NCBI RefSeq assembly: GCF_006345805.1
Contig: NC_043010.1
Location: forward strand, 51,894,001 to 51,958,000
Origin: Octopus sinensis
Taxonomy: Eukaryota
Length of the DNA: 64,000 nt
Direction: 5' to 3'
The notes beneath the pieces were generated by a model that was not told where the DNA came from, searched no databases, and worked only from the letters and a program-made list of their open reading frames with translations. The stretch's first letter is position 1. Every line of letters begins with the position of its first letter. The translations under genes and the position numbers were made by a program. Below, piece after piece: positions 572-45,514 of this stretch.

Positions 572-737
572 GCAGTAAGTTTCTGTATACAACACATGGC
601 TGGACATTGGTGAGTGCTGTCTTGGAGAAATCTTCAAATATATCTTTAACGAAGATGATGCCCTCAGTGTTCAGAGACCTCGGACTTCACAACACCTACC
701 TGGACAGGAATAAACCCATCATATATAACAGATCCAG
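572..737 (+). CDS. LACTB: LACTB penultimate coding exon
   Basis: Acceptor ctag|gc at 571/572, donor ag|gtgagg at 737/738. Encodes GSKFLYTTHGWTLVSAVLEKSSNISLTKMMPSVFRDLGLHNTYLDRNKPIIYNRSR, recognisably like vertebrate LACTB (GSQFLYSTFGYTLLAAIVE...EPVIYNRAR). Ends in phase 2. Confidence 0.93.
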
Positions 738-1938
738 GTGAGGAGAAACTCTTCCTTATTACTTATTATTATGGAATTTTTATCACTTCTTTTTAAAATC
801 TTTTTTTACTTGTTTTCAGTCATTGGACTGTGGCCATGCTGGGTCACTGCCTTGAAGGGTTTTACTCAAACAAATTGATCCCAGGAGTTATTTTATTTTT
901 TCTTTAGCTTAATATTTATTCTAGTGGTCTCTTTTGCCAAACTTGGAGATTACGGGGATGTAAACAAACAAACACTGGTTGTCAAGCATTGATGGGGAGC
1001 AAATGAAACACAAACACAATGACATACACACACTTAGATATCAATGTATTGGGGTTTTTTTCAGTTTCCTTCAACCAAATCTACTCACAGGGCTTTGGTT
1101 AGCCTGGGGCTATAATAGAAGACACTTTCCCAGGATCCTGCCATGCAGTGGGACTGAACCCCAAACCACACGGTCACTGATCTTGTTAGGAGAAAAACAA
1201 TTAGTTTTAAATCTCTGAGCGAGAAATAAGTAGTAACAATACTACAGAGTAAAGTCTATTTTCCAATATAAAGTGACAGTCCTGATTGTGATGGTGTTAC
1301 TACCTTCTTTAGCCCCAGGAAAGCATCTTTTTCAGCTGGCTATCAATGTGCAACTGTGTCCTGATACTTTGAACAAGGAATACCTGTGGACCAATGGTAT
1401 CTTCATTGGCACAAGATCACTTTTGGCTAGAGATGGCAGAACTAGGTCGTGTTCAAGAGAAATTTAAAACTAATCATTTTTCTCCTTACAAGATCAGTGA
1501 CTGTGTGTCACTTTAGAAGTATATACCTCAAGTGAAGCCTAGTGGTGCCATCTCTAACCAAGGTTATCCTGTGCCAATGAAGAGAAATGATCCAGAAACC
1601 ATTGGTCCGCAGGTATTATTTAAGGCTGAGTGGGGACATTAGCTCCCTTGCTCGAGGTGTCACACAAATGGCACCCATGCCAGTGGAATGTAAAAGCACC
1701 CATTTCACTCTTGGAGTGGTTGACATTAGCAAGAGCATCCAGCCATAGAAACGATGCCAAATCAGACTGGAGTCTGGTGCAGCCTTCCAGCTTGCCAGCC
1801 TAGGTCAAACCGTCCAACCCATGCCAGCATGGACAATGGATGCTAAATGATGATGATGAATTGTAATAAATATGTGTAAATGTAATAAAAGGAAAAAAAT
1901 TTAAAGTGCATATAGATTTTTGGCCTACCCTGTATATA

Positions 1939-2940
1939 CAGGGGTTGGGCAAAATAATGGAAACACCTTAAAATTTCAAACAAATTTATTTTAGTATGGG
2001 GTAGGACTAACTTTGGTAGTAATTACAGCTTGAATTCTATGAGGTATGGACTCATACAAAGTTGTTCATTCTTCAGCTAAAACAGTCTCCATTTCTTGTA
2101 GTGATGATGGTGGAGGACATCAACTCATTTGTTTTTCTAAAATGCACCATAAATTTTCAATAATTATCTCGTTACTGCCCACAGGGGGCTAAACATAGAG
2201 GGGACAAACAAGGACAGACAAAGGGTTTAAGTCGATTACATCGACCCCAGTGCATAACTGGTACTTATTTAATTGACCCCAAAAGGATGAAAGGCTAAGT
2301 CGACCTTGGTGGAATTGAACTCAGAACGCAACGACAGCCGAAATACTGCTAAGCATTTCACCCGGCATGCTAACGTTTCTGCCAGTTCACTGTCCTAAAT
2401 GTTCGATAATACTGAAATCTGGGAACTGTAGTGGCCAGATAAGATGTTCAACTTCACTAGAATGTTCTGCCATTCAGTAGCAACTTTAGCTGTGTGAATT
2501 AGTGCATTATCATCCTGAAAGATTGTGTTTCCCTCCGGAAACAGTTCCGCAACCATAGGATGAATTTGAGCAGATTAAATACTTAAATAATCTTGACTAT
2601 TAATTCTGCCATGAAGGGAAACCATTGGGCCAGCAGATTTCCAAGATATAGCCCCCCCCCCTCCCACGATCCATGTTTAACAGTTGGAAGAAGATAGTCT
2701 GGGTCAAATGCTTCTTTTGGCTATCTTCACATGTATACTCGGCCGGTGGTCAGAATTAAGGTAAAGGATGACTTGTCTGAGAAAATAACATTCTTCCACT
2801 GCTCTAGGGACCAATTCTGTAGGTTTTTACTCCACTCTAAATGCTTTGCAACGTTTGTTTTTGAAAGTAGTGGTTTTCTGATTGCAGCCATCCCATGAAA
2901 TCTGGCTTTGTACAGCTCCCAGTGAACAGTTTTTGTGGAA
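1939..2940 (-). mobile_element. Degenerate Tc1-family transposon, 5'-truncated, in the last LACTB intron
   Basis: TA then TIR-like CAGGGGTTGGGCAAAATAATGGAAACA at 1939. Minus-strand fragments RKPLL..WKNVIFSDKS, FQDDNA..H, WPLQFPDFSIIENLW (degenerate DDE) with stops and frameshifts. Confidence 0.85.
2165..2395 (-). mobile_element. tRNA-derived SINE (family A) inserted in the Tc1 remnant
   Basis: Matches the family-A copies elsewhere in the window. Flanked by a 15-bp duplication, taaattttcaataat / taaatgttcgataat. Confidence 0.85.
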
Positions 2941-3127
2941 ACATATATATATATATATATATATATATACACTTATACCAGTGTTGTAGTTTCAGCAATT
3001 AGCACACTCTGTGACAGCCACCACTGTATGCCACTACTTCTTACACACTTTCTACCTACATACTTTTCTATCTATCTATTATTTCAATCCTGCTTTATAC
3101 CTGTTTTTATTTATGTATTCCTCTCAG

Positions 3128-3689
3128 GTTCTACAGTTTTTCAGAGAAAGGACAAGTGGTTAATGCTCCCTACGTTGATAATTCTTACAAATGGTCTGGT
3201 GGTGGATTCCTTTCAACTGCTGAGGACTTGATAAAATTTGGAAATGCCATGCTGTACAGCTTCCAGTTTGATGACTCTGGTGATAGCACATCTCCTTTGA
3301 ATACAAAAACAGAAGGACAAAGTGCACAAAACAAGAACAGCAATGAAGCCAGGTTGAAGGGCTATCTGAAGCGCAAAACAATGTTGAATCTGTGGAAACC
3401 TGTCGAAGGGACCAATACTTCTGCGGCCCCTAATATTTATTATGGCCTTGGTTGGAGTGTTATTCCTCTCAAACATGAGCATGCTTATTGCTTGAAGAAC
3501 CGTTTCTGTGCTTTCCATACTGGGAATGCTATTGGTTCTAGTAGCATTTTGCTTATGTTACCTCGAGATTCACTGCAAACGGAAGCTAACCCTCCCAAAG
3601 GAGTGGTAGTGGCTGCCATCTGCAATATTGGTGATGTTAGTTTACGTAAATTAGCCATATCTGTAGCTGATCTGTTTGATCGGGTATAG
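3128..3689 (+). CDS. LACTB: LACTB terminal coding exon, proximal copy A (186 aa + stop)
   Basis: Acceptor tattcctctcag|g, phase 2 matching the upstream exon. Encodes FYS...[32 protein letters not shown]...FHTGNAIGSSSILL...DLFDRV*. AATAAA at 3875-3880. Confidence 0.93.
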
Positions 3690-4633
3690 GAGTTTGGTGT
3701 TGTTACTGAAAGGACAAATGAAAGGGAAATCGAAGTCAGGAAGAAAATTTGGAAGAAACAAAGTAAACTTGAAGGAAAGAAAGAAAATCTAAATGAATGA
3801 AAAAGTAAATAATTGTAAGAAAGAAATAATGAACGAAAGGCTGAAAGAAAGAAATTAAAAAAAAACAACAAAGCAATAAAATTAATAACAAATAAGAACA
3901 TTTACTTTATTTCATTTTCAGTAAGACCCTGTGCAAGCATGGCTGTGTTGTTAAGAAGTTTGCTTTGCAATTGCATTGGTTTCAGGTTCAGTCTTACTGC
4001 AAGTGTCTTTTATTTACTATAACCCCAAGTCGACCAAAGCCTTGCGAAAACATCTTTCCAAGGTGCTGCATAGTGAGACTGAACCTGAAACTACATGGTT
4101 GCGAAGTGACTTCTTAACCACATAACCATATATCTGCATCGAAGGAGTAACGGGATTAAATATCGTTTATTGTTTTATCATAATGTGCTAACGAACGCGA
4201 TAGAAGAGATGTTTGAATTGGACTCGTTATATCATTGGTGCTGGGCTTTGTTTTTATTCTGTCTTTCTCTCTGGCAGCTGGGAAGGGGTCAACATGATAG
4301 CCTGATGAAATCTGAATTATCATTTTAATGTCCACTTTTCCATGCTTGCTTGGGGCAGATGGAGTTTAGTGAGGCAATACTTGCCTGTTTCTAAGCAAGG
4401 TAATATTCCCCCATGGCTAGATATGTTTACACACATTTTTGTAAAAGAATGATGCTAGGAAGGGCATCCAACCGTAGAAACAATGCCAAATCAGACTGGA
4501 ACCTGGTGCAGCTCTCTCTCTCTCTGGCTTATCAGTTCCAGTTAAACCATCCAACCCATGCCAGCATGGAAAGCAAATGCTAAATGATGATGATGATGAT
4601 GATGATGATAATACATACATACATATATATATA

Positions 4634-4891
4634 TATATATGAAAGAAAAAGGCATTCAGAATGCTAGATGGTTGTAAAAAAATATATATTTATTTACATG
4701 TCACATATTATTTCTTCATATTTTTTAGCACTTTCAACTACTCCTGTAGTTTCATCAGAAATATGACGAGACTGCAAGAGTTGTTGAAAGTGCTATAAAA
4801 AAATGAAGAAATAATATGTGATATGTAAATAAATATATATTTTTTTTTTACAACCATCCAGCATTCTGAACGCCTTTTTCTCTCATATATA
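4634..4891. repeat. Fold-back inverted repeat, ~110-bp arms
   Basis: 4640-4750 is the near-perfect reverse complement of 4771-4885; spacer of 20 nt or less. Confidence 0.9.
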
Positions 4892-5882
4892 TTAAATCTG
4901 TACATCACCCCCAATACTTCTAACATATATGTACATATATACATATATAACCCATGCTAGCATGAAAAACGGATGTTAAACAATGATGATGAGATATATA
5001 AAGAGAGGGATAGACAGGCAGCTATATATATACATATATCTTTTGGCACTGTGTATCAATTATGATGATAATTAACAATGGATTAAATTACCATTTTCTT
5101 CTGAAGATCTGGTGTTTCAAGTTCATTATGCAATTTCTGAACAACACACTAACACGTGTAAAGATTATGTAATTTATGATGTTATAATAAAAAGATAAAC
5201 TAAATTTCCTGTTTTATTCTGTTCTCCTATATATCTATATAGATAGATGTGTATGTATATATATATATATACACACCTAGCATTCTTTCAATAGTTAATC
5301 TATCTTTCCTTCTATTTGTCACCCTCCTACCTTCTTAGAACATATTCTGTGCATATCAGGCAACACATATCAAAGATGGTTAATATTGTTTATAGTAATT
5401 CTGTTCTTAGTGTATCAATTGTTTTTTCCTTTTTTCCAAATCTAATAATACAAATGCAAATTCAACAATAAAGTCAGACTGAAGTTGCTTTATGTTTAGA
5501 AATAGCTTAAAGTTTGTATGTTTATAGTTATGGCAAAGTGTGAGTTTCAGTGCTATGACAGCAACTACCATGTACCACTACTTATCTGTCTGTTCGTCTA
5601 TCTATCTATCATCCATCAGTCTATCTCTACATCTTTGTTTGTCTATTTCAGTCTGTCTGTCTCTCCATCTCTTTGTCTGTTTCTCCATCTATCTTTCCAT
5701 CTACTTATCAATCTATCTATTTACTGGTCTGACTCTTTATCCATCTGTCTGTCTAACTCTCCATCTATCTATCAATCTATTACCTTTCTATCTTTCCCTC
5801 TATCTTGCTATCTATCCATCCAATTATCTATCTGTCAATCAATCAATCCTGCTTTATACCTGTGTTTATGTATTCCTCTCAG

Positions 5883-6426
5883 GTTCTACAGTGTCTCAAA
5901 GAATGGACAAATGGTTAATGCTCCCTACATTGACAATTCTTACAAGTGGGCTGGTGGTGGATTTCTTTCAACTGCTGAGGACTTGATAAAATTTGGAAAT
6001 GCCATGCTGTACAGCTTCCAGTTCGATGATAATGTATCACCTTTGAGTACAAAAACAGGACAAGGTATGCAAAACAAAGAGGAAGCCAGGTTGAAGGGCT
6101 ATCTGAAGCGCAAAACAATGTTGGATCTGTGGAAACCTGTTGAAGGGGCCAAAGTCTCTGAAGCTAATGATATTTACTATGGACTTGGGTGGGAGCTAAT
6201 TCCTTTCAAACATGAGCATGCTTATTGCTTGAAGAACCGTTTCTATGCTTTCCATACTGGGAATGCTGTTGGTGCTAGTAGCATTTTGCTTATTTTACCT
6301 CGAGATTCACTGCAGTCAGAGACTAACCCTCCCAAAGGAGTGATAGTGACTGCCATCTGCAATATTGGCGAGGTTAGTTTGCGTAAATTGGCCTTGTCTG
6401 TAGCTGATCTGTTTGATCGGGTATAG
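5883..6426 (+). CDS. LACTB: LACTB terminal coding exon, distal copy B (180 aa + stop)
   Basis: Identical acceptor tattcctctcag|g, phase 2. Encodes FYS...[32 protein letters not shown]...[17 protein letters not shown]...DLFDRV*. Frame intact. Confidence 0.93.
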
Positions 6427-6469
6427 GAGTTTGGTGTTGTTACTGACTAACTGAACGAAAGACAACGAA

Positions 6470-7150
6470 AGAGAAATTGAAGTAAAAAAGAAAGAAAATT
6501 TGGAAGAATGAAAGGAAAATTGATGAAGAAATAAAGAAAAATGACAAAGAAAATTTAGAAGAATGAAAGAAAAAATAATAAAGAAAAAGAAAATTGATAA
6601 AGAAATAAAGAAAAATGATAAAGAAAATTTGGAAGAGTGAAAGAAAAAATGGTGAAGAAATAAAGAAAAATGATAAAGAAAATTTGGAAGAATGAAAGAA
6701 AAAATGATAAAAAAAATTTGGAAGGATGAAAGAAAAAATGATAAAAAAAATTTGGAAGGATGAAAGAAAAAAATGATAAAAAAAATTTGGAAGGATGAAA
6801 GAAAAAATAAGGAAATAAAGAAAAATGATAAAGAAAATTTGGAAGAATGAAAGAAAAAATGATTAAAGAAATAATGAAAAATGATAAAGAAAATTTGGGA
6901 GAATGAAAGAAAAAATAAAGAAATAAAAAAATGATAAAGAAAATTTGGAAGGATGAAAGAAAAAATGATAAAGAAATAAAGAAAAATGATAAAGAAAATT
7001 TGGAAGAATGAAAGAAAAAATAAGGAAGAAAGAAAATCTAGAAAAAAAATGGAAGAAAACATAAGAAAATTTGACAGAATGACAGAAAAAATAAGAAGAA
7101 AGAAATAATAAATGAAAGAAAAAATAAGAAGAAAGAAATAATGAATGAAA
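6470..7150 (+). repeat. Purine-rich degenerate tandem repeat 3' of LACTB copy B
   Basis: Recurring aaagaaaatttggaag(a/g)atgaaagaaaaaatgat units. Confidence 0.85.
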
Positions 7151-7554
7151 GAAATAAAAACGAAATTAATAGTCAAAAAACAATAACAGCATTTGATCTC
7201 ATTTTCATTAAGAATTATGACCATATTATAAATGTGGTGATAGGAGTAAATGTGGTTTATTGTTTTCTTATAATGTAATAACATTGTGGAAGTGATGTTT
7301 CAGTTGAATCTTGTTATAATCCTGGTATTGATCTTTGTTATATTGTCTTTCTCTGTTGCACCTGAGAAGGGACCAGCATGGTAAACCCTATTGAATTTGA
7401 ATCACTTTAAAAATTTATTTTTTTAATAAAGTTAGTCATTCCTGACCAAAGATATTCCAGCTGTGGCCACCCCATCTTAATCTTTTTTTTTTAACATAGT
7501 CTATCTAAGACTATATTGTTTAATGTGTTCTTCCCGTTGCTGTTTGTTTGTTTG

Positions 7555-14542: not shown

Positions 14543-16182
14543 GGTTTGCCTCCCACCCATCCACTGTTTGACAACCAATGTTGGTTTGTTTATGTCTCCA
14601 TAAATTTGCAGTTCAGCAAAAGTCTGAAACAATTAGTACCAGACTTTAAAACAAAGAAAAAAAAGGACAAGGATCAATCTCCTCAACTAAAACTCTTTCA
14701 ATCAGTGCATCAGTGCTCCTGCATGGCCACAGTCCAATGGCTGAAATAAATAACAGAAAAATGACAAAAGATCTTCATGAACTGAAAGTCTTTAGAGTAT
14801 TGGATAGAATGCCTTGCAGTAGTTGTTACAAATTTTTGTGCTCTGAGTTCAAATCCTGCCACGGTCAACTTTGCCTTTCATCTTTTCAAGATCAAGTAAA
14901 AAAAAGTATTAATCCAGGGCAGAAGTGTTAGAGGGTCAGGCAAGATACCTTATGGTATTTGCTCTGGTCACTTTGTGTTCTGACAGCAACACCCACAGTC
15001 ACACCAATACCAGGCTGGTGGCCTTTCCCTTTGGTTAACCTTGGCACATCTTGTTGCTGTATGAGTTTTCTCTCTTCTTGATGCAATATGATGCGTCTGC
15101 AACTACAGGGGAGAAAACTGGTACAGCAACATGATGTGCCTAAATATTTTTTTCGTCCTTTTCAAGCCTAGCCAGGCTCATGGGGTCGGTTTCCTGGTTT
15201 CTATGGCATATGTGTTCCCCCTCAGCTGGACAGGATGCCAGTCCATCGCAGTGTTACTCAAGAAACAGGAAGAAAGAGTGAGAGAAAGTTGGGGCGAAAG
15301 AGTACAACAGGGGTCACCACCAACCCCTGCCAGAGCCTCATGGAGCTTTAGGTGTTTTCGCTCAATAAACACACACAACGCCTGGTCTGGTAATCGAAAC
15401 CACGATCCTCCGACCACGAGTCCACTGCCCTAACCACTGGGCCATTGCACCACCACCTAAAAGTGCCTAAATGTGCTAAAGTTTAAATATCAGTAGCATG
15501 GAAAAAGGCAACATGCTTTCACGGGCAACAGCCAATCATCCTTAGGAAATCTTGCCCAGCCCATGCCTACTCAAACAAGTACAGTGGTATGATCAACCTT
15601 GACCAATGGAGGCCCTATACCATCATTGTATCATCATCACCACTTAACATCCATCTCCGATGCTGGCATTGGTTGGACAGTCTGACAGGGACCAATAAGT
15701 CCAAGGACTGCAAAAATGCTCTAGTGTCTGCTTTAGGCATAGTTTCTATGGCTTGATGCCCTGCTTAACACAAACCACTTTACAGCATGTACTTGGTGCT
15801 TTTTTCATACCACCATCACTATTAAGGCTGCTATGCAGCTCAGAGGAGTATGAGAAATTTGTGGAGCACCAAAATCTCAAAGCTTGATCCGTTAGAATTA
15901 GTAGCTAAATCTCCTTTTAACTCTTTCATATTTAGATTACTCTGTCAAATGCTTATTTATTAACAAATGTTTTGAACTAAATGGGCAATAAAGAAATAAG
16001 AAGACATAATCCAAAGGTGCAACAAAGCGGGACTGAACCTGAAACCATGTGGCTACAAAGTGAGCTTCTTAACCACACAGCCATTCCTGCATTGATGAGA
16101 AATTGAAAAAAAAAGAAAAAAAAACAAAACATAAAAAACATAAAAACAATGACTATAAAGGGACAGTGGATTGTTTCCTTAC

Positions 16183-18587: not shown

Positions 18588-21366
18588 CTACAAGAACAAA
18601 CACTTGATGGTTAATAAATAAATTATTACAAAAAAAAAAAAAAGTGTGAAACCCTTCTTAACAGTTCCTTTCTATAACCCTTTAGTGTTTAAACCGGCCA
18701 TATCTGGCCCAAATAATCCCAAATATCCGGCCCAAATAATCTACCTGTTTTCTATTAAAACAGCCCAGGTTTGGTATCTCACACCAACCTATAATGTCAA
18801 TCTAAAAACAGGTAATAACATCATCGAAATCTTGAAGATACAGGATTATGCATGATTAATTATGCATGTAGCTATAAGATTTTGATGATGTGACTGTTTA
18901 TTTTTAGAATGACATTGTAGGGTAGGTGTAAGAGGTTAGATCTGACCAGTTCAAACATAAAACTGGAAGAATATTTTGGGATAGATGTGGCCAGTTTAAA
19001 TGCTAAAGAATTACAGAATATAATCCAAACCTTTCTTCTATATTTCTTTTTACTTTTTTATACGTTTCAGTCATTGGACAGTGGCCATGCTGGGGCAGTG
19101 CCTTGAAGGGTTTAGTCGAACAAACTGATCCTAGAAGTTATTTTATCAATTTCTTTTGCTGAACTGCTAGGGTATGGGAATGTAAACAAACCAGCAACGG
19201 GTGTCAAGCAGTGTTGGTGCTGGCTAACAGAAAAACACATACACACACACTAGCCATTACACATTATTTTTTCTCCTTGTTTCTTTCTGTGTTCCTTCCT
19301 GAAGAAGAGTGTAGGCTCGAAATGTTAAAGACTTTTTCACTTTCCGAGCATTATAATAATACATCTGTTTGTTGTCTACACCACCTGTCTTCGTCTTTTG
19401 TTTTTTTTGTGAATTCTCCCTACATATATACAGGGGAGGAGTATTTGTCCCCTACTAGTGCTTGATACCAACTGCTGTTAGTTCATTTATATCCCTGTAT
19501 CAGTGGTTCAGCAAAAGAGATCAATAGAATAAGTAACATACTTTTAAAAAGAAGTACTGGGGTCGATTTGTTCAACTAAACTCTTCAAGTCGGTGCCCCA
19601 GCATGGTCACAGACCAGTGACTGAAGTAAAAGAAAATAGGAGAAAAGATCTCTATACTATCTGGTAAAACTTCATGGCCACAGCGAGGGGGAGAGAGGAA
19701 GGTAAGAGGGAATAGAGGGAGAGAGAGAGAGAAAGAAAGGGAGCAGAGTGTGGTAGAGAGAAGGGGGAAGTAGAGAGAGAGAGAGATAGACAGACAGAGA
19801 GGGTGAGAGAGACAGACAGAGAGATAGAGTTCCAAGAATGAGATCAAGAGGGGAAGTAACAAAAGTGAAATGCAAATTAATTAACTGAGATGGTGGTGAC
19901 AGGCACAAGAGCCAAGGTTTCAGAGAAACTTGGTACCAGGCACAGAACATGGTATGAAAGAGAAGCAACAGAGAGAAGAGGACAACAACAACACAACAAA
20001 CAAGGAACAAACCAGAAACATTCATAATCATCAAATGTCTGTAAAATGATACAGGATGTCTAGATAATTACTTTATGATAATTCAATAAGGTGGAGGCAC
20101 GTGGTTTAGTGGTTAGGGTGTCAGCATCATGATCGTAAGATTGTGGTTTCGATTCCTGGACCGGGCGACGCATTGTGTTCTTGAGCAAAACACTTCATTT
20201 CACGTTGCTCCAGTCCACTCAGCTGGCAAAAATGAGTAACGCTGCGATGGACTGGCGTCCTGTCCAGCTGGGGAACACATACGCCATTGAAACCAGGAAA
20301 CCGGGCCCATGAGCCTGGCTAGGCTTTAAAATTGCACATTTATTATTATTTTTTTTAATTAATTCAATACATCTGATTGCAAACATGGCTGTGTGGTTAA
20401 GATGCCCACTTTGCAACCATGTGGTTTGTGGTTCAGTCCTACAGTACCTTGGGCAAGTGTCTACTATGGTCCCAGGCTCACCAATGTCTTGTGAGTGAAT
20501 TTGGTAAATGGAAACCATGTGGAAGCCTGTTGTTTGTACATATCTATGTGTGGGGGTGAAAGTGGATGGCTGAGTGGTTAGGGTGTTGCACTTACGAGCA
20601 TAAGATCATCATCATCATCATCATCATTTAACATCCGTTTTCCATGCTAGCATGGGTTGGACGGTTCGACTGGGGTTTGGTAAGCCATGGAGGCTGCACC
20701 AGGCTCTAGTCTGATTTGGCAGTGTTTCTACAGCTGGATGCCCTTCTTAATGCCAACCACTCCATGAGTGTAGTGGGTGCCTTTTACGTGCCACCAGCAC
20801 AGGGGTCAGAGCAGACTGGCAAACGGCCACGATCGTTGGTGCTTTTATGTGTCACCGACATGGACGCCAGTCGGGCGGTGCTAATATCTGCCACGTTCGG
20901 ACGGTGCTTTTTACGTGTCACCGGTACAGGTGTCTTAACTACAATTTCCATTTGAATCTTTATTTTGATGCTGACGTACTTGACTCAAGAGGTCTCCTCA
21001 AGAACAGCGGGTCACTCTACGATCCAAGGTTAGCACAGCAGGCCATCCTGCAAGCCATGAACTCACTTCATTTGTCAGGTCTTCGAAGTCACAGCATATC
21101 TCCAGATCATGGTTTCAATTCTCAGACCAGCACTGTGTTATGTTCTTGAGTAAGACACTTCATTTCATGTTGTTCCAGTCCACTCAGCTGTAAATGGCTG
21201 ACCCTGCAATGGACTGGCTTCTTGTTCAGAGCCACTTAAAGTGTCATACTGCATTACTACTTAATATTCTGTTGCTTATTTTGATTTTATTTACCTTACT
21301 TCGAGCTGTGCGGATAATACCGGACTGACTTGGTGCTTCAACATAAGTACCTAATTCAACTGAATC

Positions 21367-22794: not shown

Positions 22795-25216
22795 TTGTTT
22801 GGCATTACAGTAAAGTTGACCGTAGATTCCTAACCACACACTCGTAATGGAACAGTAAGTGAATGTGCGCGTATGCGTAATTGGGTGTAAGTGCGCGCGA
22901 GCATATATGTGAAAAATACAGCCAAAATGTCAATAAAGTAAAAATTAAATAAATACATAAAACAGTTAATGAAATTCGAAAAGTAGTTCTTTATATTCGC
23001 GAAAATATCCACTTCTAAAAACAAGCCAACCTATTATACTAATTGTATTTGTAAGATGTCAAGTACACACTAATTGCTTTATAAATTTCTCCTTGTCCTC
23101 TTGTTATTTTTGCTTAGAAAAAAATCTTCAACGCTTGTAATTAACGAATAGAGTATTCTATAGATATTTTTAAAATATTTTCCTTTTAATTACTTTTACT
23201 CCCTGGTGATTGCTAATTCAAAGTATTAGATTAGTAGAACTGTTAGTATTTAGTTTCAATTTCTAAGGTTCTAAGTTCGAATCACACCGAAGTTAATTTT
23301 GTAGGTAAAACTACAGATGCGTACCTCTCTGCCTCACCCACCCACCGATTTTGTTTCGTTATGACTTTCTGAATAATGAATATAATTTTATTATAATTTT
23401 CCAGAGTTACATTTTAGATAGTGTAAATTAAAGTTATACTGAAACTTTTAGCGAAAAGCTTTTTTGGATAGTTGGAGAGGAATTTCGGATAATTCACACA
23501 ACTCTTATTAACTTTCTGAAAAATGGATAGTTTTTTATAAAATTTTCTATAAATATGCTTCAGATGGTAGAGATTACGATTATGTCTGAGTTTGAGGTGA
23601 AAAAAGAAAACTGTGGGTAGCATCGCGCGACGGATAATTCACATAGTCCAACTTTATTTTCTGTTATGTGAAATAGCCGCTCCGCCCACTTTTTTTTTTT
23701 TTTTTTACTCATCAAATTCCGTTATAATAATAGTCTGAAACGTATTTGTTCTTTTACTTGTTCCAGTATTTGTGTTGCGGCCATGCTGGAGCACTGCCTT
23801 GAAGGGTTTATTCAAACAAATCGCCTCCACCCCCGCTGTACTTATTTTTTAAGTCTGATACTCACACACTCTCTCTCTCTCTCTCTCTCTCCATCTCTCA
23901 AACCTTTAGGTTACAGTGGCGTAAACAAACCAACACTAGCTGTCAAGCGGGGGGGTGGGACTAACACACACACACACATGCACAGTGGGCGTCCACATAG
24001 TTTCCTTCAACCGAATCCACTCACAGGGCATTGATCGACCCAGAACTTATAGCAGGAGACACTTGTCCAAGGTGTCACAAAGTGGAATTGACTTCCTTAG
24101 TTTTGTCAATAATGGACTCTCAACTGCTAGAGAAAGCAGCAACTCATCTCCTTGCAAGGGACATATACAAAAACAGTGCCAAAACAGGCACTGGTGTCAC
24201 CATTAGCTAGTGATTAACCCCCTAACCATCAACTATCCATCTGTCACAACTTCAAACAACCCCCCCACCACCTGCACTTTATCCTAACCTTCAGCAGCCA
24301 AGCGTCATCCACGTGCAACTGAAACACTTCATGTGAAATCTACAGACTTCGACATTTAGATACCTCAAAAACATCCCCTAATGGAATCATACCAATCTTG
24401 TCCCCTTTGAGAATACAATCCCTATACACATCTCATTCTAATTTTGACACAAGGCTAACAATTTTGAGGGGAGAGAGCAGTCAATTACATCCACCCAAGA
24501 GATTGACTGGTACTGGTTTTATTGATCCCAAAAGGATGAAAAGCAAAATTGGACTTGGTAGGATTGGAATTCAGAATGAAGAGTCCCAAAAAATACTCCT
24601 ACACAGCACTTGTGCTAGTAGCATGTGAAAAAACATTTGAGCGAGGTCATTGCCAGTGCTGCTGGACTGGTGGCACATAAAAAACACCATTTGAGTGTGG
24701 CTGTTGCCAGTACCGCCTGACTGGCCCTTGTGCCGGTGGTATGTAAAAGCACCCACTACACTCTCGGAGTGGTTGGCATTAGGAAGGGCATCCAGCTGTA
24801 GAAACTCTGCCAGATCAAAATTGGAGCCTGGTGCAGCCATCTGGTTTGCCAGTCCTCAGTCAAATCATTCAACTCATGCTAGCATGGAAAGCAGACGTTA
24901 AACGATGATGATGATGATTTTGTCCAACTCACTAACAGTTCTGCCCGCTTACCTCCTTACAATCGCTATAAATATCCTCTCAACTAAAGCAAAAAAGGCC
25001 TGAAATTTGTGGAAAGGGTGATAATTGATTACATCAACCTGTGTTCAACTAGGGTTGATGTAATCAACCTTGAAAGGCAAAGTTGATCTTGGCAGAATTT
25101 CAACTCAGAATGTAAAGATGGGAGAAATGCCACTAAGCATCTTGTCCAGGATGCTAACGGTTCTGCCAGCTCACCCCCTTCACAATCACTACATATATAT
25201 ACACCCGTCTACCACC

Positions 25217-32380: not shown

Positions 32381-34790
32381 CTGCAAAAAGAAGAAAGAAA
32401 GAAAGTATAAAGACCAAATGTCATAAAATATCATTCGTTTTAAAATAATAGCTATCATTGATGATAATCATGATGTCTATAATTAATTACATATGCTTGG
32501 TTTTGGGCATCCTCCCTACTCAAGCCAACCCTCCCAATCTCCTTCTCCCTTCACGTTTTCCTCAGACTATCTTACTTTCAAGGTCTGTTTACCTCAAACC
32601 CAAGCACCCTCCTCAGAACATGCACCTCATCCCTCCTCATCCCATACCAATTTCTTTACTACCCACAAGGGAGCTAAACACAGAGAGGACAAACAAGGAC
32701 AGAGAAACGGTATTAAGTCGATTATATCGACCCCAGTGTGTAACTGGTACCTATTTAATCGACCCCAAAAAGATGAAAGGCAAAGTCGACCTCGGCAGAA
32801 TTCGAATGTTGCGGCAGACGAAATACTGCTAAGCATTTCGGCTGGTGTGCTAACGATTCTGCCAGCTCACTGCCTTCCATTCATTTTAACATAATAGCTA
32901 TCAATGATGATAATCATGATGTCTATAATTAATTACATATGTAATATCAACACAAACATTATTACGATATACAACAGTCAAACATTTTAGTCAACACTCC
33001 ACTAAAAAAAAAAAGGGTAGATGCAAAAAACAAATCGTTAACTCTTTTGATATCAAACCACCCAAGACTGTATCTATGATACAAATTTCTTATTTTAAAG
33101 TCAGCTAAATTAACCCTTTAGCACCATCCAAGCGTGATTGTTGCCAGGGCAGCTAACTGGCCTCCGTACCGGTGGCACGTAAGAGGCACCATTCGAGCGT
33201 GATCGTTACCAGCATCACCTTACTGACACCTGTGCCGGTAGCATGTGTAAAAAGATTCGAGCGAGGTCGTAGCGAGTACTGCCTGATTGGCCCCCGTGCT
33301 GGTGGCACGTAAAAGCACCCACTACACTCTCGGAGTGGTTGGCGTTAGGAAGGGCATCCAGCTGTAGAAACTCTACCAGATCAAGATTGAAGCCTGGTGC
33401 AGCCATCTGATTCGCCGGCCCTCTGACAAATCGTCCAAACCATGCTAGCATGGAAAGCAGACGTTAAACAATGATGATGATGATGATGATTTCTGTTGAA
33501 ATACACTGCCTTCGTTTCAATAATTTTTGAAACCAATGAAGAATTTATCAAAATAATTGCACTCTTAGTATTTAAACCAGTCAAATCCAGTCAAAATATT
33601 CTGTTTTATCTTCAAACTGGTTGAATCCGGCCTTTCACACCTACCCCCAATAGTGTTACTTTAAAAATAAACAATTACATCATCAAAATCTTAAGACTAT
33701 GAGACAAAGCATGATTAATTCAAAACAATGTGAAGAAATAAGCATTACATTTGACAGAGTAATGTGAATGCTAAAGGGTTAAACTTGTGTTTGGAATATA
33801 AATTAACATGGAATTTTGATGGGGGATTTTAATTTAGATCATTTTAAAACAGTGAATTTGTATCATAGGAGCAGGGGCAGTCTTACGTGGGTTGCTATCA
33901 AAAGGGTTAAAACCCCCCACAAAAATTTCATATTAATTTATCTTTCAAATACCAGCTTTATTATGATAAAGGTATTTTACTAAATTCTTCATTATTACCA
34001 AAATTAATTAAAACAAGGACAGTGTGTTTTAACAGAACTTCGGTAATGAAAAAGATTTTTTTAAAAAGTGGGTGGTAGTTACATTAACCCTTTCGATACC
34101 AACCAGCCTGAAACTGTCTCTGGCTCTGTAGTACAAATGTCATTTTCAAAAGGTTCTCAATTAAAATCTTCTACCAAACCTTTGTCACAATTTATGTTCC
34201 TAACACTAGCTTAATGATAAAGTTATTTTACTAAATTCTTTGTTATATTTAATGTAATTGAAAGAAATACAGAGCATCTCAAAATAAATACAGTAACAAA
34301 ATCACGACAAATTTATGCTATAAGTTACTTGGTGACCCTGCCAGTGCTGGTGCCACATAAAAAGTATATAGTCCACACTGTAAAGTGGTTGGCATTTGGA
34401 AGGGAAGCCAGCTGTAAAACCCACATCAAAACTGACCTTGCCTGTGCTGGTGCCAAAATATATATATATATATATATACACGATATTTACCACATGAACT
34501 ACGATGAAAAAAATGATGAAAAAAATGAGAAAGATATGCATATAATTTTTTTGTGCAGGGATTCCTTGAGACGTAATTTAATTTAAGGGTTATGCAAGGG
34601 TAAAAAGGTTGAGGAACACTGCTCTATAGAATGGCTGGCATTAGAAATGGCACGTATTGTGTTCAAAAGCCAAGTATATTACTATGTTAGAAACCAGTTC
34701 ATTCTTTAAAGGAAGAACTCAAAGAAATGCACACACACACAGGCATAGGTAGGTAGGGAGTCAGACAGATAAAAAGAGGTTTAAACTTAC

Positions 34791-36088: not shown

Positions 36089-37911
36089 CTGTTGTATAGA
36101 ATGAGAAGGAAGAAAAATATATTAAGGCAAAAGAAAAAAAAACAGAACAGAACACAAACAGCAACAGAAGAAATTGTTTTAAATGAAATTAGACATTTTC
36201 AATAATATTAATAATAACAATAACTATAAATACCTATTTCTTTATTGCCCACAAGGGGCTAAACATAGAGGGGACAAACAAGGACAGACATAGGTATTAA
36301 GTCGATTACATCGACCCCAGTGCGTAACTGGTGCTTAATTTATCGACCCCAAAAGGATGAAAGGCAAAGTCGACCTTGGCGGAATTTGAACTCACAACGT
36401 AACGGCAGACGAAATAATGCAAAGCATTTCGCCCGGAGTGCTAACGCTTCTGCCAGCTCGCCGCCTAATAACTATGAATACCATCATCACTATCTTCCAC
36501 AGATTAAATTTATATTTACAAGGAGTGACTGTGTGGTAAGTAGCTTGCTTATGAACCACATGGTACTGGGTTCAGTCCCACTGCGTGGCACATTGGGCAA
36601 GTGTCTTCTACTATAGCCTCGGGCTGACCAAAACCTTGTGAGTGGATCCGGTAGACGGAAACTGAAAGAAGCCCGTCGTATATATGTATATATATGTGTT
36701 TGTATGTATGTGTGTGTTTGTGTCTGTTCCCCCCCCCCTCAACATCACTTGACAACCATTGTGTATATGTGTACATGCACACACACAATGGGGTTCTTTA
36801 AGTTTCTTATTTCTTTATTGCCCACAAGGGGCTAAACAGAGAGGGGACAAACTAGGACAGACAAAAGGATTAAGTCGATTATATTGACCCCAGTGCGTAA
36901 CTGGTACTTAATTTATCGACCCCGAAAGGATGAAAAGCAAAGTCGACCTTGGTGGAATCTGAACTCAGAATGTAACAGCAGACAAAATACCGCTAACCAT
37001 TTCGCCCAGTTCACCACCACCTTTAAGTTTCTGTTTACCAAATCCACTCACAAGTTTATAGTAGAAGACATTTGCCTAAGGTGTCATAAAATGAGACTGA
37101 ACACAAAACCATATGGCTGGGAAGCAAACTTTACCACACAGCCATTTCTTAGTCTACAGAAGAAATCAGATAAAAGCATCCACATCAACACACACGAAGG
37201 ACATCCAGCTGTAAAAACCATGCCAAAACAAACCTCACCTGTGCTGGTGCCATGTGACAAGCACTCAGCCCACTCTGCAGAGTGGTTGATGTTAGGGAGG
37301 GCATCCAGTTGTAAAAATCATGCCAAAACAGACAGAGTAGCCTGGTGCAGTCTTCCACTTGGCCAGCTCCTGTCAAACCGTCCAACCCATGCCAGCATGG
37401 AAGGCAGATGTTAAATGATGATGATGATGATGATAAATACACCTGAGACCCCCTTCAGTCATGACTGACTGTAGGATTGCACCTAGAAAGTTACCCTCCC
37501 AGGCACAGGTCCGGGCAAGGTTGTTTATGGAAGACCAGCAGTCGCCCATGCATACCGGCCTCCCCTCTCCAGTGAAGGTACATGGTTCAGTGGTTAGAGT
37601 ATCAAGCTTACGATCGTGATGTCGTGAGTTTGAATCCCAGACCGGGCTGCATGTTGTGTTCTTGAGCAAGACACTTTATTTCATGTTGCCCCAGTTCACT
37701 CAGCTGTAGAAATGATTTGCGACATCACAGGTGCCAAGCTGTATTGGCCGTTGTCTTTCCCTTGGATAAATACACCACAAAATAATTATTTAGGTGTGAG
37801 TGGATGTAGATTCAAACTTAGATATTTTTAAAAGTATATTACCACAGTACATCCACCAGACTTCTTCAAATACAAAAAACACTGGGGGACTGTTTTCATA
37901 GTTTAACTTAC

Positions 37912-38497: not shown

Positions 38498-39480
38498 GGG
38501 ACTGAACAAGATAAAACTCATGGGACAACAATAGGATAACAAAGAGGACTGAACAACAAGACTATTAAGGGACTGAATGGATAGGATAACTCAGGGAACT
38601 GAAAAACAGGATAACAAAGAGGACTGAACAGCTGGCAATAAGGGGACTGGATGATAGGACAAGGGGATTAAATATCAGGCCAACTAGAGGACTAAAAAAC
38701 AGGACCACTAAGGGAATATTATGTTTCTCTAAGTCTGTCTAAGGCAGTGAAACATACAACTGGTAGAGTGTCTTACAGTGTTAACTTGACAAAATGCACA
38801 TGTGTGTACTTCAGAATTACAAGTACAATCTATCTGAGGTTCTCGTACTTTCTGTCTCCTGTCAATATTCAGTGATAAGGTTTGGGACAACCTGAGGCTA
38901 TGTTAAGGGTACTTGCCCAAACCTGTGTTCACAGGATTGTCAAGTGGACTTCTTGGCCACTGTAGCCATGTCTGCATTCATCTCTGCTGTCTAGTTTCTT
39001 TTTGTATTACTCTTGCTCTTTGGCCGAGCTGCAGCAATTTTTGTCAGGTTCCCAAAGCATCAAGTGCCGAAAATGAACTTTCTTATCTTCCATTTTAAAG
39101 GGTTACAGAATTAACACAGGTTATAGGAACATAAACCTTCTTCCACGAAAAGATAGCTTAAACTGTGCTCTAAATGGAGGTGTGGTCAAATCATATTTTA
39201 TGGACTCAACCATGTTCTAAAATAAGTCGAAAGGTAAGCTACTATAAATCGGCACAAACTTTCCGGACAACCCAATATTTCCCTATGACTGGACATGATT
39301 TCATGGAAGAATCGAAACAAAGGATGCTGCTTGTGTGATGATGACACAACAATCATGTGATGTTAATTACAAAGAAACAGACGCACACACACATAGATAT
39401 GACAGGCATCTTTCAGTCATGTTGAGGTTCACCTCGTTGGCTCAGGCTCAGTTTGGTGGTGAGAGTGTCTTGAGACTTAC

Positions 39481-39601
39481 CTGAATCTATAATACTTTGC
39501 CAAAGATTTTCAATGAGAGCTGGATCAAAGAGGCCAGCAGAATGGACAATAGCCAGCTTGCATTCATGCAGGCCGTATGGATCAGCAAATTTTTCATAGA
39601 G
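39481..39601 (-). CDS. NUP155: NUP155 exon
   Basis: LYEKFADPYGLHECKLAIVHSAGLFDPALIENLWQSIIDS; hallmark FADP..L.ECKLAI. Confidence 0.95.
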
Positions 39602-40097
39602 CTGAAAGGGAGAGGATATAAAAAGTATTAGAGAGAATGAGAGAGAGAGAGAGAGAGAATGATAGAGAGAGAATGAGAGAGAGAGTGAGTGAGAGAGAGA
39701 GAGAGTGAGAGAGAGTGTGAGTGAGTGTGAGTGAGTGAGAGAGAGACTGTGAGTGAGTGAGAGTGAGTGAGTGAGAGAGAGAGTGAGTGAGAGAGAGAGA
39801 TGATTGTGAAGAAGAGAGAACTGTGAATAAAAAAAAGAAATAAAGAGTGTGAACGAGAGAGAGAGAGGCAAAGAGAGGGATAAACAATTATGCATGAGAA
39901 ACAGAGAGAAAGGCAAAGAGTGAAAACTATGAATGAGAGAGCAAGAACAATGAACAGTTAAGAGAGAGAGTGAGCAGAGAATTGAAAGAGAAAAAAGAGA
40001 AAGAAAATGGGTGCAAATGAAAGGAGGAGAGAGAGAGAGAGATTGAAAAAGAGTAGGAGATAATGAGACACAGAGTGTATTAATAGGTGAGACTTAC

Positions 40098-41879: not shown

Positions 41880-42456
41880 AAGACCTGTTGAGGCAAGTGA
41901 AAATCAAATCAAATCAAATCAAAATAGATGAACATCAATGGAATTTGAAACTTTGTGGTACCAGTGCCGGTGGCACATAAGAAAACCATCCGAACGTGGC
42001 CGTAGCCAGTACCGCATCGACTGGCCTCCGTGCTGTGGGCACGTAACAAACACCATCCGATCGTGGCCATTTGCCAGCCTCGTCTGGTACCTGTGTCAGT
42101 GGCACATAAAAAACACCATCCAAGCGTGGCTGTTCGCCAGCCTCGTCTGGCACCTGTGTCGGTGGCACATAAAAAACACCATCCGAGCGTGGGCATCTGC
42201 CAGCCTCATCTGGCACCTGTGTCGGTGGCACATAAAAAACACCATCCAAGCGTGGCCATTCGCCAGCCTCGTCTGGCACCTGTGTCGGTGGCACATAAAA
42301 TCACCCACTACACTCTCGGAGTAGTTGGCGTTAGGAAGGGCATCTAGCTGTAGAAACACTGCCAGATCTGACTGGCCTGGTGCAGCCTTCGGGCTCCCCA
42401 GACCCCAGTTGAACCATCCAACCCATGCTAGCATGGAAAGCGGACGTTAACGATGA

Positions 42457-42460
<4 letters not shown>
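41880..42460 (+). mobile_element. (GAT)n-tailed SINE (family C) with internal 63-bp tandem repeats
   Basis: cactacactctcggagt..gttggcgttaggaagggcatc..ccaacccatgctagcatggaaagcggacgttaa(cgat)n. Internal 63-bp period (anchors at 42058, 42121, 42184, 42247). Many other family-C copies (near 1670, 20610, 24590, 33125, 37190, 54835, 62150, 63885). Confidence 0.8.
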
Positions 42461-42496
<36 letters not shown>

Positions 42497-42929
42497 TATT
42501 ATATTATATGATCATCATCATCTTAATGTCCTCTTTTCCATCTCACATGGGTCAGATGGAATTTGTTGAGCAGATTTGACAATGACTGGATGCCCTTCCT
42601 GTTGCCAACCCTCATCTGTTTCCAATAAGGTAAATTTTCCCATGGTTAGACAGGTCTTCACAGAAGATTGGAAACAAAGTACACTGCTTATATGACAGTG
42701 ATACTCATTTACAACTATTACACTATGCCAAAACAAGGAGACATTAACACACTTACACACACATATCATCATCATTATTTCTCGTCCGTTTTCCATGCTG
42801 GCATGGGTTGGATGGTTTGACAAGAGCTAGCAAGGCCAGGAGTCACACCAGGTTCTACAGCTGGATGCCCTTCCTAACACCAACCACTTTACAGAGTGTA
42901 CTGGGTGCTTTTTACACAGCACCATTACC

Positions 42930-45190: not shown

Positions 45191-45514
45191 AATACATTTT
45201 ATGTGGCACACACACACACACACACATATATACATAGGATGGGTTTCTTTCAGTTTCCCTCTATCAAATCCACTCAAGGCTTTGGTTTGCCTGGGGCTAT
45301 AGTAGAAGACATGCCCAAGGGGAACTGAACCCAAAACCATGAGGTTATGAAGCAAACTTCTTGATCACACAGCTACAATGAACATAGTTTTTTTTCTATT
45401 TCCATCGACCAAATCCACTTACAAGGCATTTGGTAGTTATGGGCTATAAGTGAAGATTCTTACCCAATTTACCACACAGTGGAATGGAACCTGACACTAT
45501 ATTGTTGCAAAGTT

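What the first reader, a model, noticed from the sequence alone, without database searches (positions are those of the whole stretch)
572..6426. LACTB carries two intact alternative terminal exons encoding the C-terminal part of the enzyme
Seen: one penultimate exon (572-737, ends phase 2) is followed by two full copies of the last coding exon. Both have the same acceptor (tattcctctcag|g), the same phase, an intact frame to TAG and a shared start of the 3' UTR (ggagtttggtgttgttactga). They differ by 18 nt of indels, all in frame, and are about 82% identical in protein by hand count. No second copy of the penultimate exon was found between them. Established: LACTB is a filament-forming mitochondrial serine protease of the penicillin-binding-protein/beta-lactamase fold. 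The Y-x-T motif is in the shared exon here, the SxxK serine is expected further upstream, and the KTG-equivalent HTG strand is in the duplicated exon. Inference: one locus makes two LACTB enzymes that share the N-terminal catalytic residues but differ in the HTG-containing half, chosen by alternative 3' splicing/polyadenylation, and could co-assemble into mixed filaments. I do not recall this being described for LACTB.
Basis: partly seen in the sequence, partly recalled or inferred. Interest (0 to 1): 0.82.

Follow-up and report, generated by a model that had tools for sequence, protein, structure and literature searches.

The report
Duplicated last coding exon of LACTB
The end of this animal's LACTB gene (a filament-forming mitochondrial protease) carries two intact, diverged copies of its last coding exon that both look kept by selection, so the gene probably makes two enzyme versions, which is a well-known way for genes to gain isoforms and is still unproven here without RNA data.

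Summary
One penultimate LACTB exon (572-737) is followed by two tandem copies of the terminal coding exon: A at 3128-3689 and B at 5883-6426. Both have the same acceptor and phase and both end in TAG. They share 148 of 180 aligned residues and differ by three in-frame indels. Each ~1.3 kb copy also carries ~80 nt of intron tail, a 3'UTR and poly(A) hexamers.

Both copies look selectively maintained:
- dN/dS is 0.44.
- Polarised amino-acid changes are 9 on A and 10 on B.
- Second codon positions are depleted.
- Indels are about ten times rarer than in the flanks.
- The branch-point, polypyrimidine and AG region is nearly identical.
- Simulations reject one copy being neutral since the duplication (P<0.001).

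No upstream LACTB exon is duplicated, so B can only use the shared upstream exons. The single closer relative I could fetch has one terminal exon.

No transcript, annotation or close-relative genome was reachable, so alternative use is inferred, not shown. Mixed filaments are speculation. A and B do differ at equivalents of human filament-interface and substrate-cavity residues, but the enrichment is not significant.

Homologous alternative C-terminal exons are common (77 of 236 human tandem-duplicated-exon events), so this is a new member of a known kind, of moderate interest.

The parts
572..737 (+). Shared penultimate LACTB coding exon (SKFLYTTHGW...IIYNRS). It holds the YTT (YxT) catalytic motif at 586-594 and ends with 2 nt of a split Arg codon. 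The donor GT is at 738-739.
   Evidence: tblastn with full-length animal LACTBs ends exactly here. The same exon boundary occurs in L001.
3084..3127 (+). Conserved intron tail of copy A: a branch-point-like CTTTATAC at 3093-3100, a pyrimidine tract and AG at 3126-3127, with no AG in between.
   Evidence: There is 1 mismatch plus one 4-nt gap over the last 40 aligned nt against copy B, while the neutral flanks differ by 19-27% (P about 4e-4).
3128..3689 (+). Terminal coding exon A (186 aa plus TAG). It holds KW-SGGG, the variable loop at 3270-3347 and HTG at 3516-3524.
3690..3930 (+). 3'UTR of copy A, with ATTAAA at 3854 and AATAAA at 3875.
3932..4133 (.). Dispersed foldback repeat inserted just downstream of A's poly(A) signal. 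It is absent at the matching place in copy B.
4140..4328 (+). Downstream flank of copy A that is still homologous to 7243-7410 (73% identity). It marks the 3' end of the duplicated unit.
4329..5807 (.). Spacer between the two copies: dispersed repeats, a ~260-nt palindrome (4633-4892) and a CT-rich microsatellite (about 5580-5823). It holds no LACTB-like coding sequence.
5839..5882 (+). Conserved intron tail of copy B: a branch-point-like CTTTATAC at 5852-5859, a pyrimidine tract and AG at 5881-5882.
5883..6426 (+). Terminal coding exon B (180 aa plus TAG). It holds KW-AGGG, the variable loop at 6025-6084 and HTG at 6253-6261.
6427..7215 (+). 3'UTR of copy B, expanded by a 55-nt minisatellite (6491-7035, 9.8 copies, each unit with AATAAA). 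AATAAA at 7153 lies in the UTR tail that is homologous to the stretch holding A's 3875 signal.
7243..7410 (+). Downstream flank of copy B, homologous to 4153-4328.

Best explanation
A tandem duplication of about 1.3 kb copied the whole 3' terminal unit of LACTB: the last ~80 nt of the final intron, the terminal coding exon, the 3'UTR and the poly(A) region.

The gene therefore has two homologous alternative last exons behind one penultimate exon. The donor at 738 is spliced either to acceptor A (3127), with cleavage after the AATAAA at 3875, or past A to acceptor B (5882), with cleavage in B's own UTR.

The result would be two LACTB proteins with the same N-terminal part. That part includes the YTT motif here and, by inference, SxxK upstream of the window. 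The two proteins would differ in the C-terminal ~180 residues, which hold the HTG strand, the L15 filament loop and part of the substrate cavity.

Shown: the anatomy, the common phase, intact signals on both copies, and selection on both coding sequences.

Inferred: that both are spliced and translated today, how the choice is made, and that the isoforms differ in function. Differences in filament contacts or substrate preference are suggested only by the positions that differ.
For: Anatomy:
- The layout, phase and reading frames are as described.
- The duplicated block includes the intron tail, the UTR and the flank.

Selection on both copies:
- dN=0.10 and dS=0.23, giving a ratio of 0.44. 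Synonymous against nonsynonymous by Fisher gives P=0.005.
- Amino-acid changes polarised with L001 are 9 on A and 10 on B. If one copy were neutral, P is 3e-4 to 7e-3.
- Differences by codon position are 24, 9 and 30.
- The CDS is 88.8% identical, against 73-81% in the noncoding parts of the same block. It has 3 indels, all in frame and all in one loop, against about 4-5 per 100 nt in the flanks.
- A simulation of 'one copy neutral since the duplication' gives P(9 or fewer second-position differences and no stop) = 0.0003-0.0008 at the divergence that reproduces the third-position differences.
- Both copies score the same against a profile of non-octopus LACTBs (232.8 and 229.7 bits), against Pfam (36.4 and 38.4 bits) and against individual orthologues.

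Signals:
- The acceptor regions are nearly identical and include a branch-point-like motif.
- Each copy has poly(A) hexamers.

Context:
- No other LACTB exons lie near B.
- The only closer relative, L001, has a single terminal exon and is equally distant from A and B, at 55.8% and 54.2%.
Against: - There is no RNA, 3'-end or peptide evidence of any kind. Exact-ORF look-ups and two protein searches found no close relative or transcript.
- The two acceptors are equally strong, so the proximal exon A might take nearly all splicing.
- Synonymous differences cluster near nonsynonymous ones (P=0.017), and there are identical runs of 39-59 nt. Some gene conversion may therefore have helped keep one copy intact.
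- A dN/dS of 0.44 is relaxed compared with the deeper comparison (0.11-0.17, though dS is saturated there).
- Recent silencing of one copy cannot be excluded.
Confidence: 0.65

Rival explanations
1. Only one copy is used now. The other is an unspliced or recently silenced relic that still looks intact, either because silencing is recent or because gene conversion from the working copy keeps repairing it.
For: - Divergence is mosaic, with long identical runs and synonymous changes clustering near nonsynonymous ones.
- No expression evidence was obtainable.
- The acceptors are identical, which would favour the proximal exon.
Against: - Polarised changes are symmetric, 9 against 10.
- Second-position and indel deficits are incompatible with long neutral evolution of either copy.
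- In the most diverged segments, which are not recently converted, all indels are still in frame and there are no stops.
- The splice-signal region is conserved in both copies.
Confidence: 0.2
2. Both exons are spliced in, but the choice is unregulated noise and the two proteins are functionally equivalent. This would be a neutral redundancy on its way to losing one copy.
For: - The catalytic HTG and the equivalents of K394 and Y460 are the same in both copies, and most substitutions are conservative.
- Enrichment of differences at named interface and cavity positions is not significant (P=0.086).
Against: - Retention of both copies to dS of about 0.23 with purifying selection on each.
- Non-conservative differences at equivalents of human W454 (Ala against Glu), Y377 (Phe against Val) and E457 (Asn against Asp).
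Confidence: 0.2
3. Copy B belongs to a separate transcription unit, with its own start or foreign upstream exons, rather than to LACTB.
For: An ORF stays open from an ATG at 5518 through the CT-rich microsatellite into exon B.
Against: - No LACTB exon copies or other coding signal lie between A and B.
- The open frame runs through low-complexity sequence.
- B keeps the same acceptor, branch-point region and phase as A.
- A C-terminal half without the SxxK serine would not be an enzyme.
Confidence: 0.05
4. This is an assembly artefact: two haplotypes, or a collapsed or expanded repeat, placed in tandem.
For: None was found. It is considered only because tandem false duplications do occur in assemblies.
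Against: - The copies differ by about 11% in the CDS and 19-27% in the flanks.
- They also differ by a 540-nt minisatellite expansion, a repeat insertion and a 1.5 kb unrelated spacer. This is far beyond allelic divergence.
Confidence: 0.02

Closest known systems
Tandem duplicated exon substitution events with C-terminal swaps (human catalogue, PMC9741552; for example the three homologous 3' exons of TPM1, Tm1 and lev-11)
   Same: Adjacent homologous exons arise from a tandem duplication. They have the same phase and are used one at a time to give isoforms that differ only in a homologous region. Changes are mostly conservative and core and ligand residues are kept. C-terminal events are the most enriched class (77 of 236).
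   Different: - Those events are supported by transcripts and peptides and are mostly ancient, at more than 500 My. This one is lineage-specific, being absent from L001, and expression is untested.
- Typical C-terminal events swap tails, transmembrane helices or coiled coils. This one swaps about 180 residues, the last third or so of the mature enzyme, including a catalytic motif and filament contacts.
- LACTB is not in that catalogue.
Mutually exclusive terminal exon clusters in Drosophila (pip; the PGRP-LC 3' variable regions chosen through competing RNA structures), as reviewed in PMC9013439
   Same: Tandemly repeated terminal exons each have their own 3' end, and one is chosen per transcript.
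   Different: No docking or selector base-pairing above shuffled controls was found here. There are two copies only, and regulation is unknown.
Human LACTB (PDB 7ULW, 7V1Y, 7V21; PMC9815587)
   Same: - It is the same family, with E=7e-60 over the 241 residues encoded here.
- The YST/YTT and HTG motifs, K394, Y460 and an ungapped L15 loop are present in both isoforms.
- The terminal exon starts at the same place, human residue 373.
   Different: - Each vertebrate and arthropod LACTB protein recovered in the searches aligns to a single terminal-exon-encoded segment, and the one relative locus fetched (L001) has a single terminal exon.
- The sequence here has an 18-24 residue longer surface loop and two versions of the C-terminal region.
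- Those versions differ at equivalents of Y377, K380, L383, W454, E457 and S527.

Membership tests
LACTB (serine beta-lactamase-like protein, PBP/beta-lactamase fold) | Sequence membership in the Pfam Beta-lactamase domain PF00144, with best matches to LACTB orthologues | tested here: met
   - PF00144 scores 36.4 bits (A) and 38.4 bits (B) against a cut-off of 27.
- Human LACTB PDB chains match at E=7e-60.
- The top named database hits are all LACTB.
LACTB (serine beta-lactamase-like protein, PBP/beta-lactamase fold) | Second and third catalytic motifs (human 323-YST-325 and 485-HTG-487) | tested here: met
   YTT at 586-594 in the shared exon. HTG at 3516-3524 (A) and 6253-6261 (B). Both align to the human motifs (motifs as given in PMC9815587).
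LACTB (serine beta-lactamase-like protein, PBP/beta-lactamase fold) | Catalytic SxxK motif and mitochondrial targeting sequence | not testable with these tools
   These lie in exons upstream of the window start. Only the last two exon positions are in the window.
LACTB (serine beta-lactamase-like protein, PBP/beta-lactamase fold) | LACTB-specific filament elements encoded in the last exon (the beta3-beta4 hairpin with the Y377 and L383 equivalents; the L15 loop at 467-482) | tested here: met
   Both copies align without gaps to human 373-399 and 464-487. Filament formation itself was not tested.
Tandem-duplicated homologous alternative last exons | Two adjacent homologous exons in the same gene and orientation, with no duplicated upstream exon | tested here: met
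   tblastn of A against B gives E=1e-99. No other LACTB exon copies are in the window.
Tandem-duplicated homologous alternative last exons | Same splice phase, so that either exon continues the reading frame of the shared upstream exon to a stop | tested here: met
   Both joins read through to TAG.
Tandem-duplicated homologous alternative last exons | Each copy has its own acceptor signals and poly(A) signal | tested here: met
   - The branch-point-like motif, pyrimidine tract and AG are conserved in both.
- AATAAA is at 3875 for A and at 7153, among others, for B.
- These are consensus matches only, not evidence of use.
Tandem-duplicated homologous alternative last exons | Both copies maintained by purifying selection on the protein | tested here: met
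   This rests on one outgroup and two sequences.
Tandem-duplicated homologous alternative last exons | Both exons seen in mature transcripts, one per transcript | not testable with these tools
   No transcript data or close-relative sequences were retrievable.
Tandem-duplicated homologous alternative last exons | Regulation by competing RNA structures (docking and selector sites). This is not defining for the class and was checked as a possible mechanism. | tested here: not met
   The best duplexes between the conserved acceptor-proximal segments and intron 738-3047 are no better than shuffles.

The most novel reading that the evidence does not exclude
An octopus-lineage LACTB makes two isoforms whose swapped C-terminal region changes both a substrate-cavity residue (the human W454 equivalent: Ala in A, Glu in B) and filament-contact residues (the Y377, L383, E457 and S527 equivalents). 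Isoform choice would then set substrate preference and decide whether protomers form separate or mixed filaments. This would be isoform-level tuning of a polymerising mitochondrial protease, which has not been described for LACTB in the literature I could search.
Probability: 0.2. Interest if true: 0.55.

Novelty: new member of a known kind. Interest (0 to 1): 0.36.

Why it matters
If both exons are used, LACTB would be an example of a tandem exon duplication that swaps a large structured part of an enzyme rather than a tail. The swapped part holds a catalytic motif, part of the substrate cavity and the contacts that build the filament needed for activity.

That gives a natural pair of variants for testing how filament interfaces and the cavity rim control LACTB activity. 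It also adds a lineage-specific case to the catalogue of homologous-exon isoforms.

It does not open a new mechanism. Alternative homologous last exons are common, and the biological role of LACTB in molluscs is unknown.

Tried and rejected
1. Looking for transcripts or close relatives.
- A protein search with the penultimate exon joined to A found nothing closer than 56% identity.
- A profile search with A, B and L001 found no further cephalopod-like sequence.
- Exact look-ups of the exon-A and exon-B ORFs found nothing on record.
- A metagenome scan found only a 31% relative.
- So no junction evidence was obtained, and the duplication can be dated only as 'absent from L001'.

2. Docking or selector RNA pairing between the conserved acceptor-proximal segments and the upstream intron is not better than shuffles.

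3. Rfam gave no match in the window.

4. Enrichment of A/B differences at human filament-interface and cavity residues is 6 of 21 against 20 of 144, Fisher P=0.086. This is suggestive only.

5. AlphaFold2 on the 241-residue fragment gave a mean pLDDT of 62. That is too low for structural comparison, so I used it only to note that the indel-bearing loop is low-confidence and ran no fold search.

6. Pairwise dN/dS alone (0.44) does not separate 'both constrained' from 'one neutral'. I therefore used branch polarisation, codon-position counts, indel counts and simulation.

7. Literature: no paper contains both LACTB and octopus, and nothing on homologous LACTB exons turned up.

8. I considered and rejected a haplotype or assembly artefact and an independent gene for B. 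See the rival explanations.
Full report
**What is in the sequence**

The window starts inside a LACTB gene on the + strand. An exon at 572-737 is flanked by AG at 570-571 and GT at 738-739. It encodes SKFLYTTHGWTL...IIYNRS and ends with two bases (AG) of a split codon.

Two homologous exons follow. Exon A is 3128-3689 and exon B is 5883-6426. Each starts with G, giving AGG (Arg) at the junction, and each reads in the same frame to TAG. A encodes 186 residues after the junction codon and B encodes 180.

They share 148 of 180 aligned residues (82%, or 79.6% counting gap columns). tblastn of one against the other gives E=1e-99. The 18-nt length difference is three in-frame indels of 9, 3 and 6 nt. 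All three lie in one loop, at 3270-3347 in A and 6025-6084 in B.

tblastn with the penultimate exon, and with ten full-length animal LACTBs, finds no other LACTB exon anywhere in the 64 kb.

**Extent of the duplication**

The repeated block is larger than the exon. It runs from about 3048 to 4328 in copy A and from 5808 to 7410 in copy B. It covers about 80 nt of intron tail, the CDS, the 3'UTR and about 190 nt of further flank.

The copies have since diverged in three ways:
- A dispersed foldback repeat sits at 3932-4133, just after A's poly(A) signal.
- A 55-nt minisatellite (9.8 copies, 6491-7035) has expanded in B's UTR.
- The 1.5 kb between the copies is made of dispersed repeats, a ~260-nt palindrome and a CT-rich microsatellite.

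Ungapped identity is 88.8% in the CDS and 73-81% in the noncoding parts. This rules out a haplotype or assembly duplication.

**Identity of the gene**

The 241 residues from the penultimate exon joined to A match human LACTB structures 7V21, 7ULW and 7V1Y at E of about 7e-60. Both versions pass the Pfam Beta-lactamase cut-off.

Human LACTB has the motifs 164-SISK-167, 323-YST-325 and 485-HTG-487 (PMC9815587). YTT here aligns to 323-325 in the shared exon, and HTG aligns to 485-487 in both duplicated exons. The terminal exon starts at the equivalent of human residue 373. The SxxK motif and the targeting peptide lie upstream of the window and cannot be checked.

**Are both copies alive?**

No expression data could be reached, so I tested for selection.

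1. Nei-Gojobori estimates for A against B are dN=0.101 and dS=0.228, a ratio of 0.44. Nonsynonymous change per site is lower than synonymous (Fisher P=0.005).

2. That ratio alone would also fit one constrained copy plus one neutral copy, so I polarised the amino-acid differences with the one outgroup available (L001). Nine fall on the A branch and ten on the B branch. If one copy were neutral and the other constrained at 0.15-0.25, P is 3e-4 to 7e-3.

3. Nucleotide differences by codon position are 24, 9 and 30. I ran a simulation in which one copy drifts neutrally since the duplication, at the divergence that reproduces the observed ~30 third-position differences. It gives about 21 second-position differences and a stop codon in about 90% of runs. 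The joint probability of 9 or fewer second-position differences and no stop is 0.0003-0.0008.

4. Indels occur at about 4-5 per 100 nt in the noncoding parts of the block, with lengths of mostly 1-5 nt. The 560-nt CDS has only three, all multiples of three, and all in a loop that varies in length among animals and is low-confidence in an AlphaFold model.

5. A and B fit a profile of non-octopus LACTBs equally well, at 232.8 and 229.7 bits. They also fit individual orthologues equally well.

6. The last 40 aligned intron bases before each acceptor differ by one substitution and one 4-nt gap. The probability is about 4e-4 at the flank divergence. This stretch contains a branch-point-like CTTTATAC, a pyrimidine tract and an AG-free run to the acceptor.

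7. Each copy has poly(A) hexamers. A has AATAAA at 3875. B has AATAAA at 7153, in the UTR tail homologous to the stretch holding A's signal, plus many more inside the minisatellite.

Together these results reject the idea that either copy has been a dead relic for most of the time since the duplication.

Caveats:
- There is one outgroup only.
- Synonymous differences cluster near nonsynonymous ones (P=0.017), and identical runs of 39-59 nt exist, so some gene conversion is possible.
- Recent silencing cannot be excluded.

**Relatives**

Two database searches returned no close relative. The nearest is an unnamed 136.6 kb ENA contig (L001). It is 70% identical in the penultimate exon and 54-56% identical in the terminal exon.

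L001 has the same exon boundaries but only one terminal exon within 10 kb on either side. It is equally distant from A and B, which fits a duplication after the two lineages split. Its motifs ([25 protein letters not shown]) suggest another cephalopod, but that is my inference. I could not confirm that the window is from an octopus.

**How it most likely works**

The anatomy is that of homologous alternative last exons. The donor at 738 pairs either with acceptor A, followed by cleavage downstream of A's stop, or with acceptor B after A is skipped.

The two acceptors are practically identical in strength. The last 19 intron nt are the same. The choice must therefore depend on kinetics (A is transcribed first), on use of A's poly(A) site, or on trans-acting factors. 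I found no docking or selector RNA pairing. This step is inferred.

**What differs between the isoforms**

I mapped the differences onto human numbering. The residue lists come from PMC9815587.

| Human residue | Role in human LACTB | Copy A | Copy B |
|---|---|---|---|
| Y377 | polymer interface 1 | F | V |
| L383 | polymer interface 1 | V | M |
| S527 | polymer interface 1 | D | E |
| E457 | salt bridge, polymer interface 2 | N | D |
| K380 | listed among dimer-interface disease variants | K | N |
| W454 | near the catalytic site | A | E |

- The loop at 449-457 is the most diverged ungapped segment, and it carries four of the nine A-derived changes.
- HTG and the equivalents of K394, Y460, A413, Y416 and Y434 are unchanged.
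- Six of 21 named positions differ, against 20 of 144 others (Fisher P=0.086). This is suggestive, not significant.

**Comparison with what is known**

Tandem exon duplication followed by one-at-a-time use is a catalogued mechanism. Of 236 human tandem-duplicated exon substitution events, 77 swap one C-terminal region for a homologous one, and this is the most enriched class (PMC9741552). [quoted passage not shown]

LACTB does not appear in those papers. No paper in the library mentions LACTB together with octopus.

Two things are less usual here. The swapped part is a large structured portion of an enzyme, holding a catalytic motif and filament contacts. The event also looks young and lineage-specific. 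I file it as a new member of a known kind.

**Verdict**

Selection on both copies makes two isoforms the most likely reading (about 0.65).
- Expression, regulation and any functional difference are untested.
- Whether public annotation already lists both isoforms could not be checked.
- Interest is moderate (0.36).

Noticed in passing
window 39413-39916, minus strand: An ORF fragment matches Pfam Nucleoporin_C (E=4.8e-10) with a NUP155-like sequence (...[37 protein letters not shown]...). This is probably an exon of a convergent neighbouring gene about 32 kb downstream of LACTB.
   Followed up: partly
window 42906-45209 and 42038-42300: A 26-nt satellite of 88.7 copies at 95% match, next to a 63-nt repeat of 4.2 copies. 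Together they account for the GC-rich stretch with negative GC skew at 42-46 kb.
   Followed up: no
window 6491-7035: A 55-nt A-rich minisatellite (9.8 copies) sits in the 3'UTR of exon B, and each unit carries AATAAA. Copy A has roughly a single unit. This could give B transcripts many alternative cleavage sites or a much longer UTR.
   Followed up: partly
window 4633-4892: A ~260-nt near-perfect palindrome (arms 94-96% complementary, 6-nt centre) lies between exon A and exon B. It is single-copy in the window. It would form a long hairpin in any pre-mRNA that reads through to B.
   Followed up: partly
window 3660-3709 = 6397-6446: A 50-nt run is identical between the two copies and spans the last 27 coding nt, the TAG and the first 20 nt of the UTR. 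It is not conserved in L001. It may be a shared regulatory element or a gene-conversion tract.
   Followed up: partly
window 4456-4606 with copies at 1727-1859, 20605-20749, 24780-24918, 33346-33490, 37287-37434, 42332-42499, 54838-54968 and 62334-62497; also 3932-4133 with copies near 10558, 16000-16091, 20378, 45275, 54776 and 63121: Two dispersed short repeat families (74-82% identical copies, both orientations) populate the introns and the spacer. One of them, a foldback, is inserted just after exon A's poly(A) signal. Rfam gave no tRNA or other RNA family match in the window.
   Followed up: partly
window 5518-6426: A 302-codon ORF starts at an ATG at 5518 and stays open through the CT-rich microsatellite into exon B. 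This is most likely a chance effect of low-complexity sequence.
   Followed up: no
L001 1-666 and 2115-2348: The ENA contig carrying the single-copy LACTB relative has retroelement fragments (RT_RNaseH, Integrase_H2C2, RVT_1) about 9 kb upstream of the terminal exon. It shares no repeats with the window.
   Followed up: no
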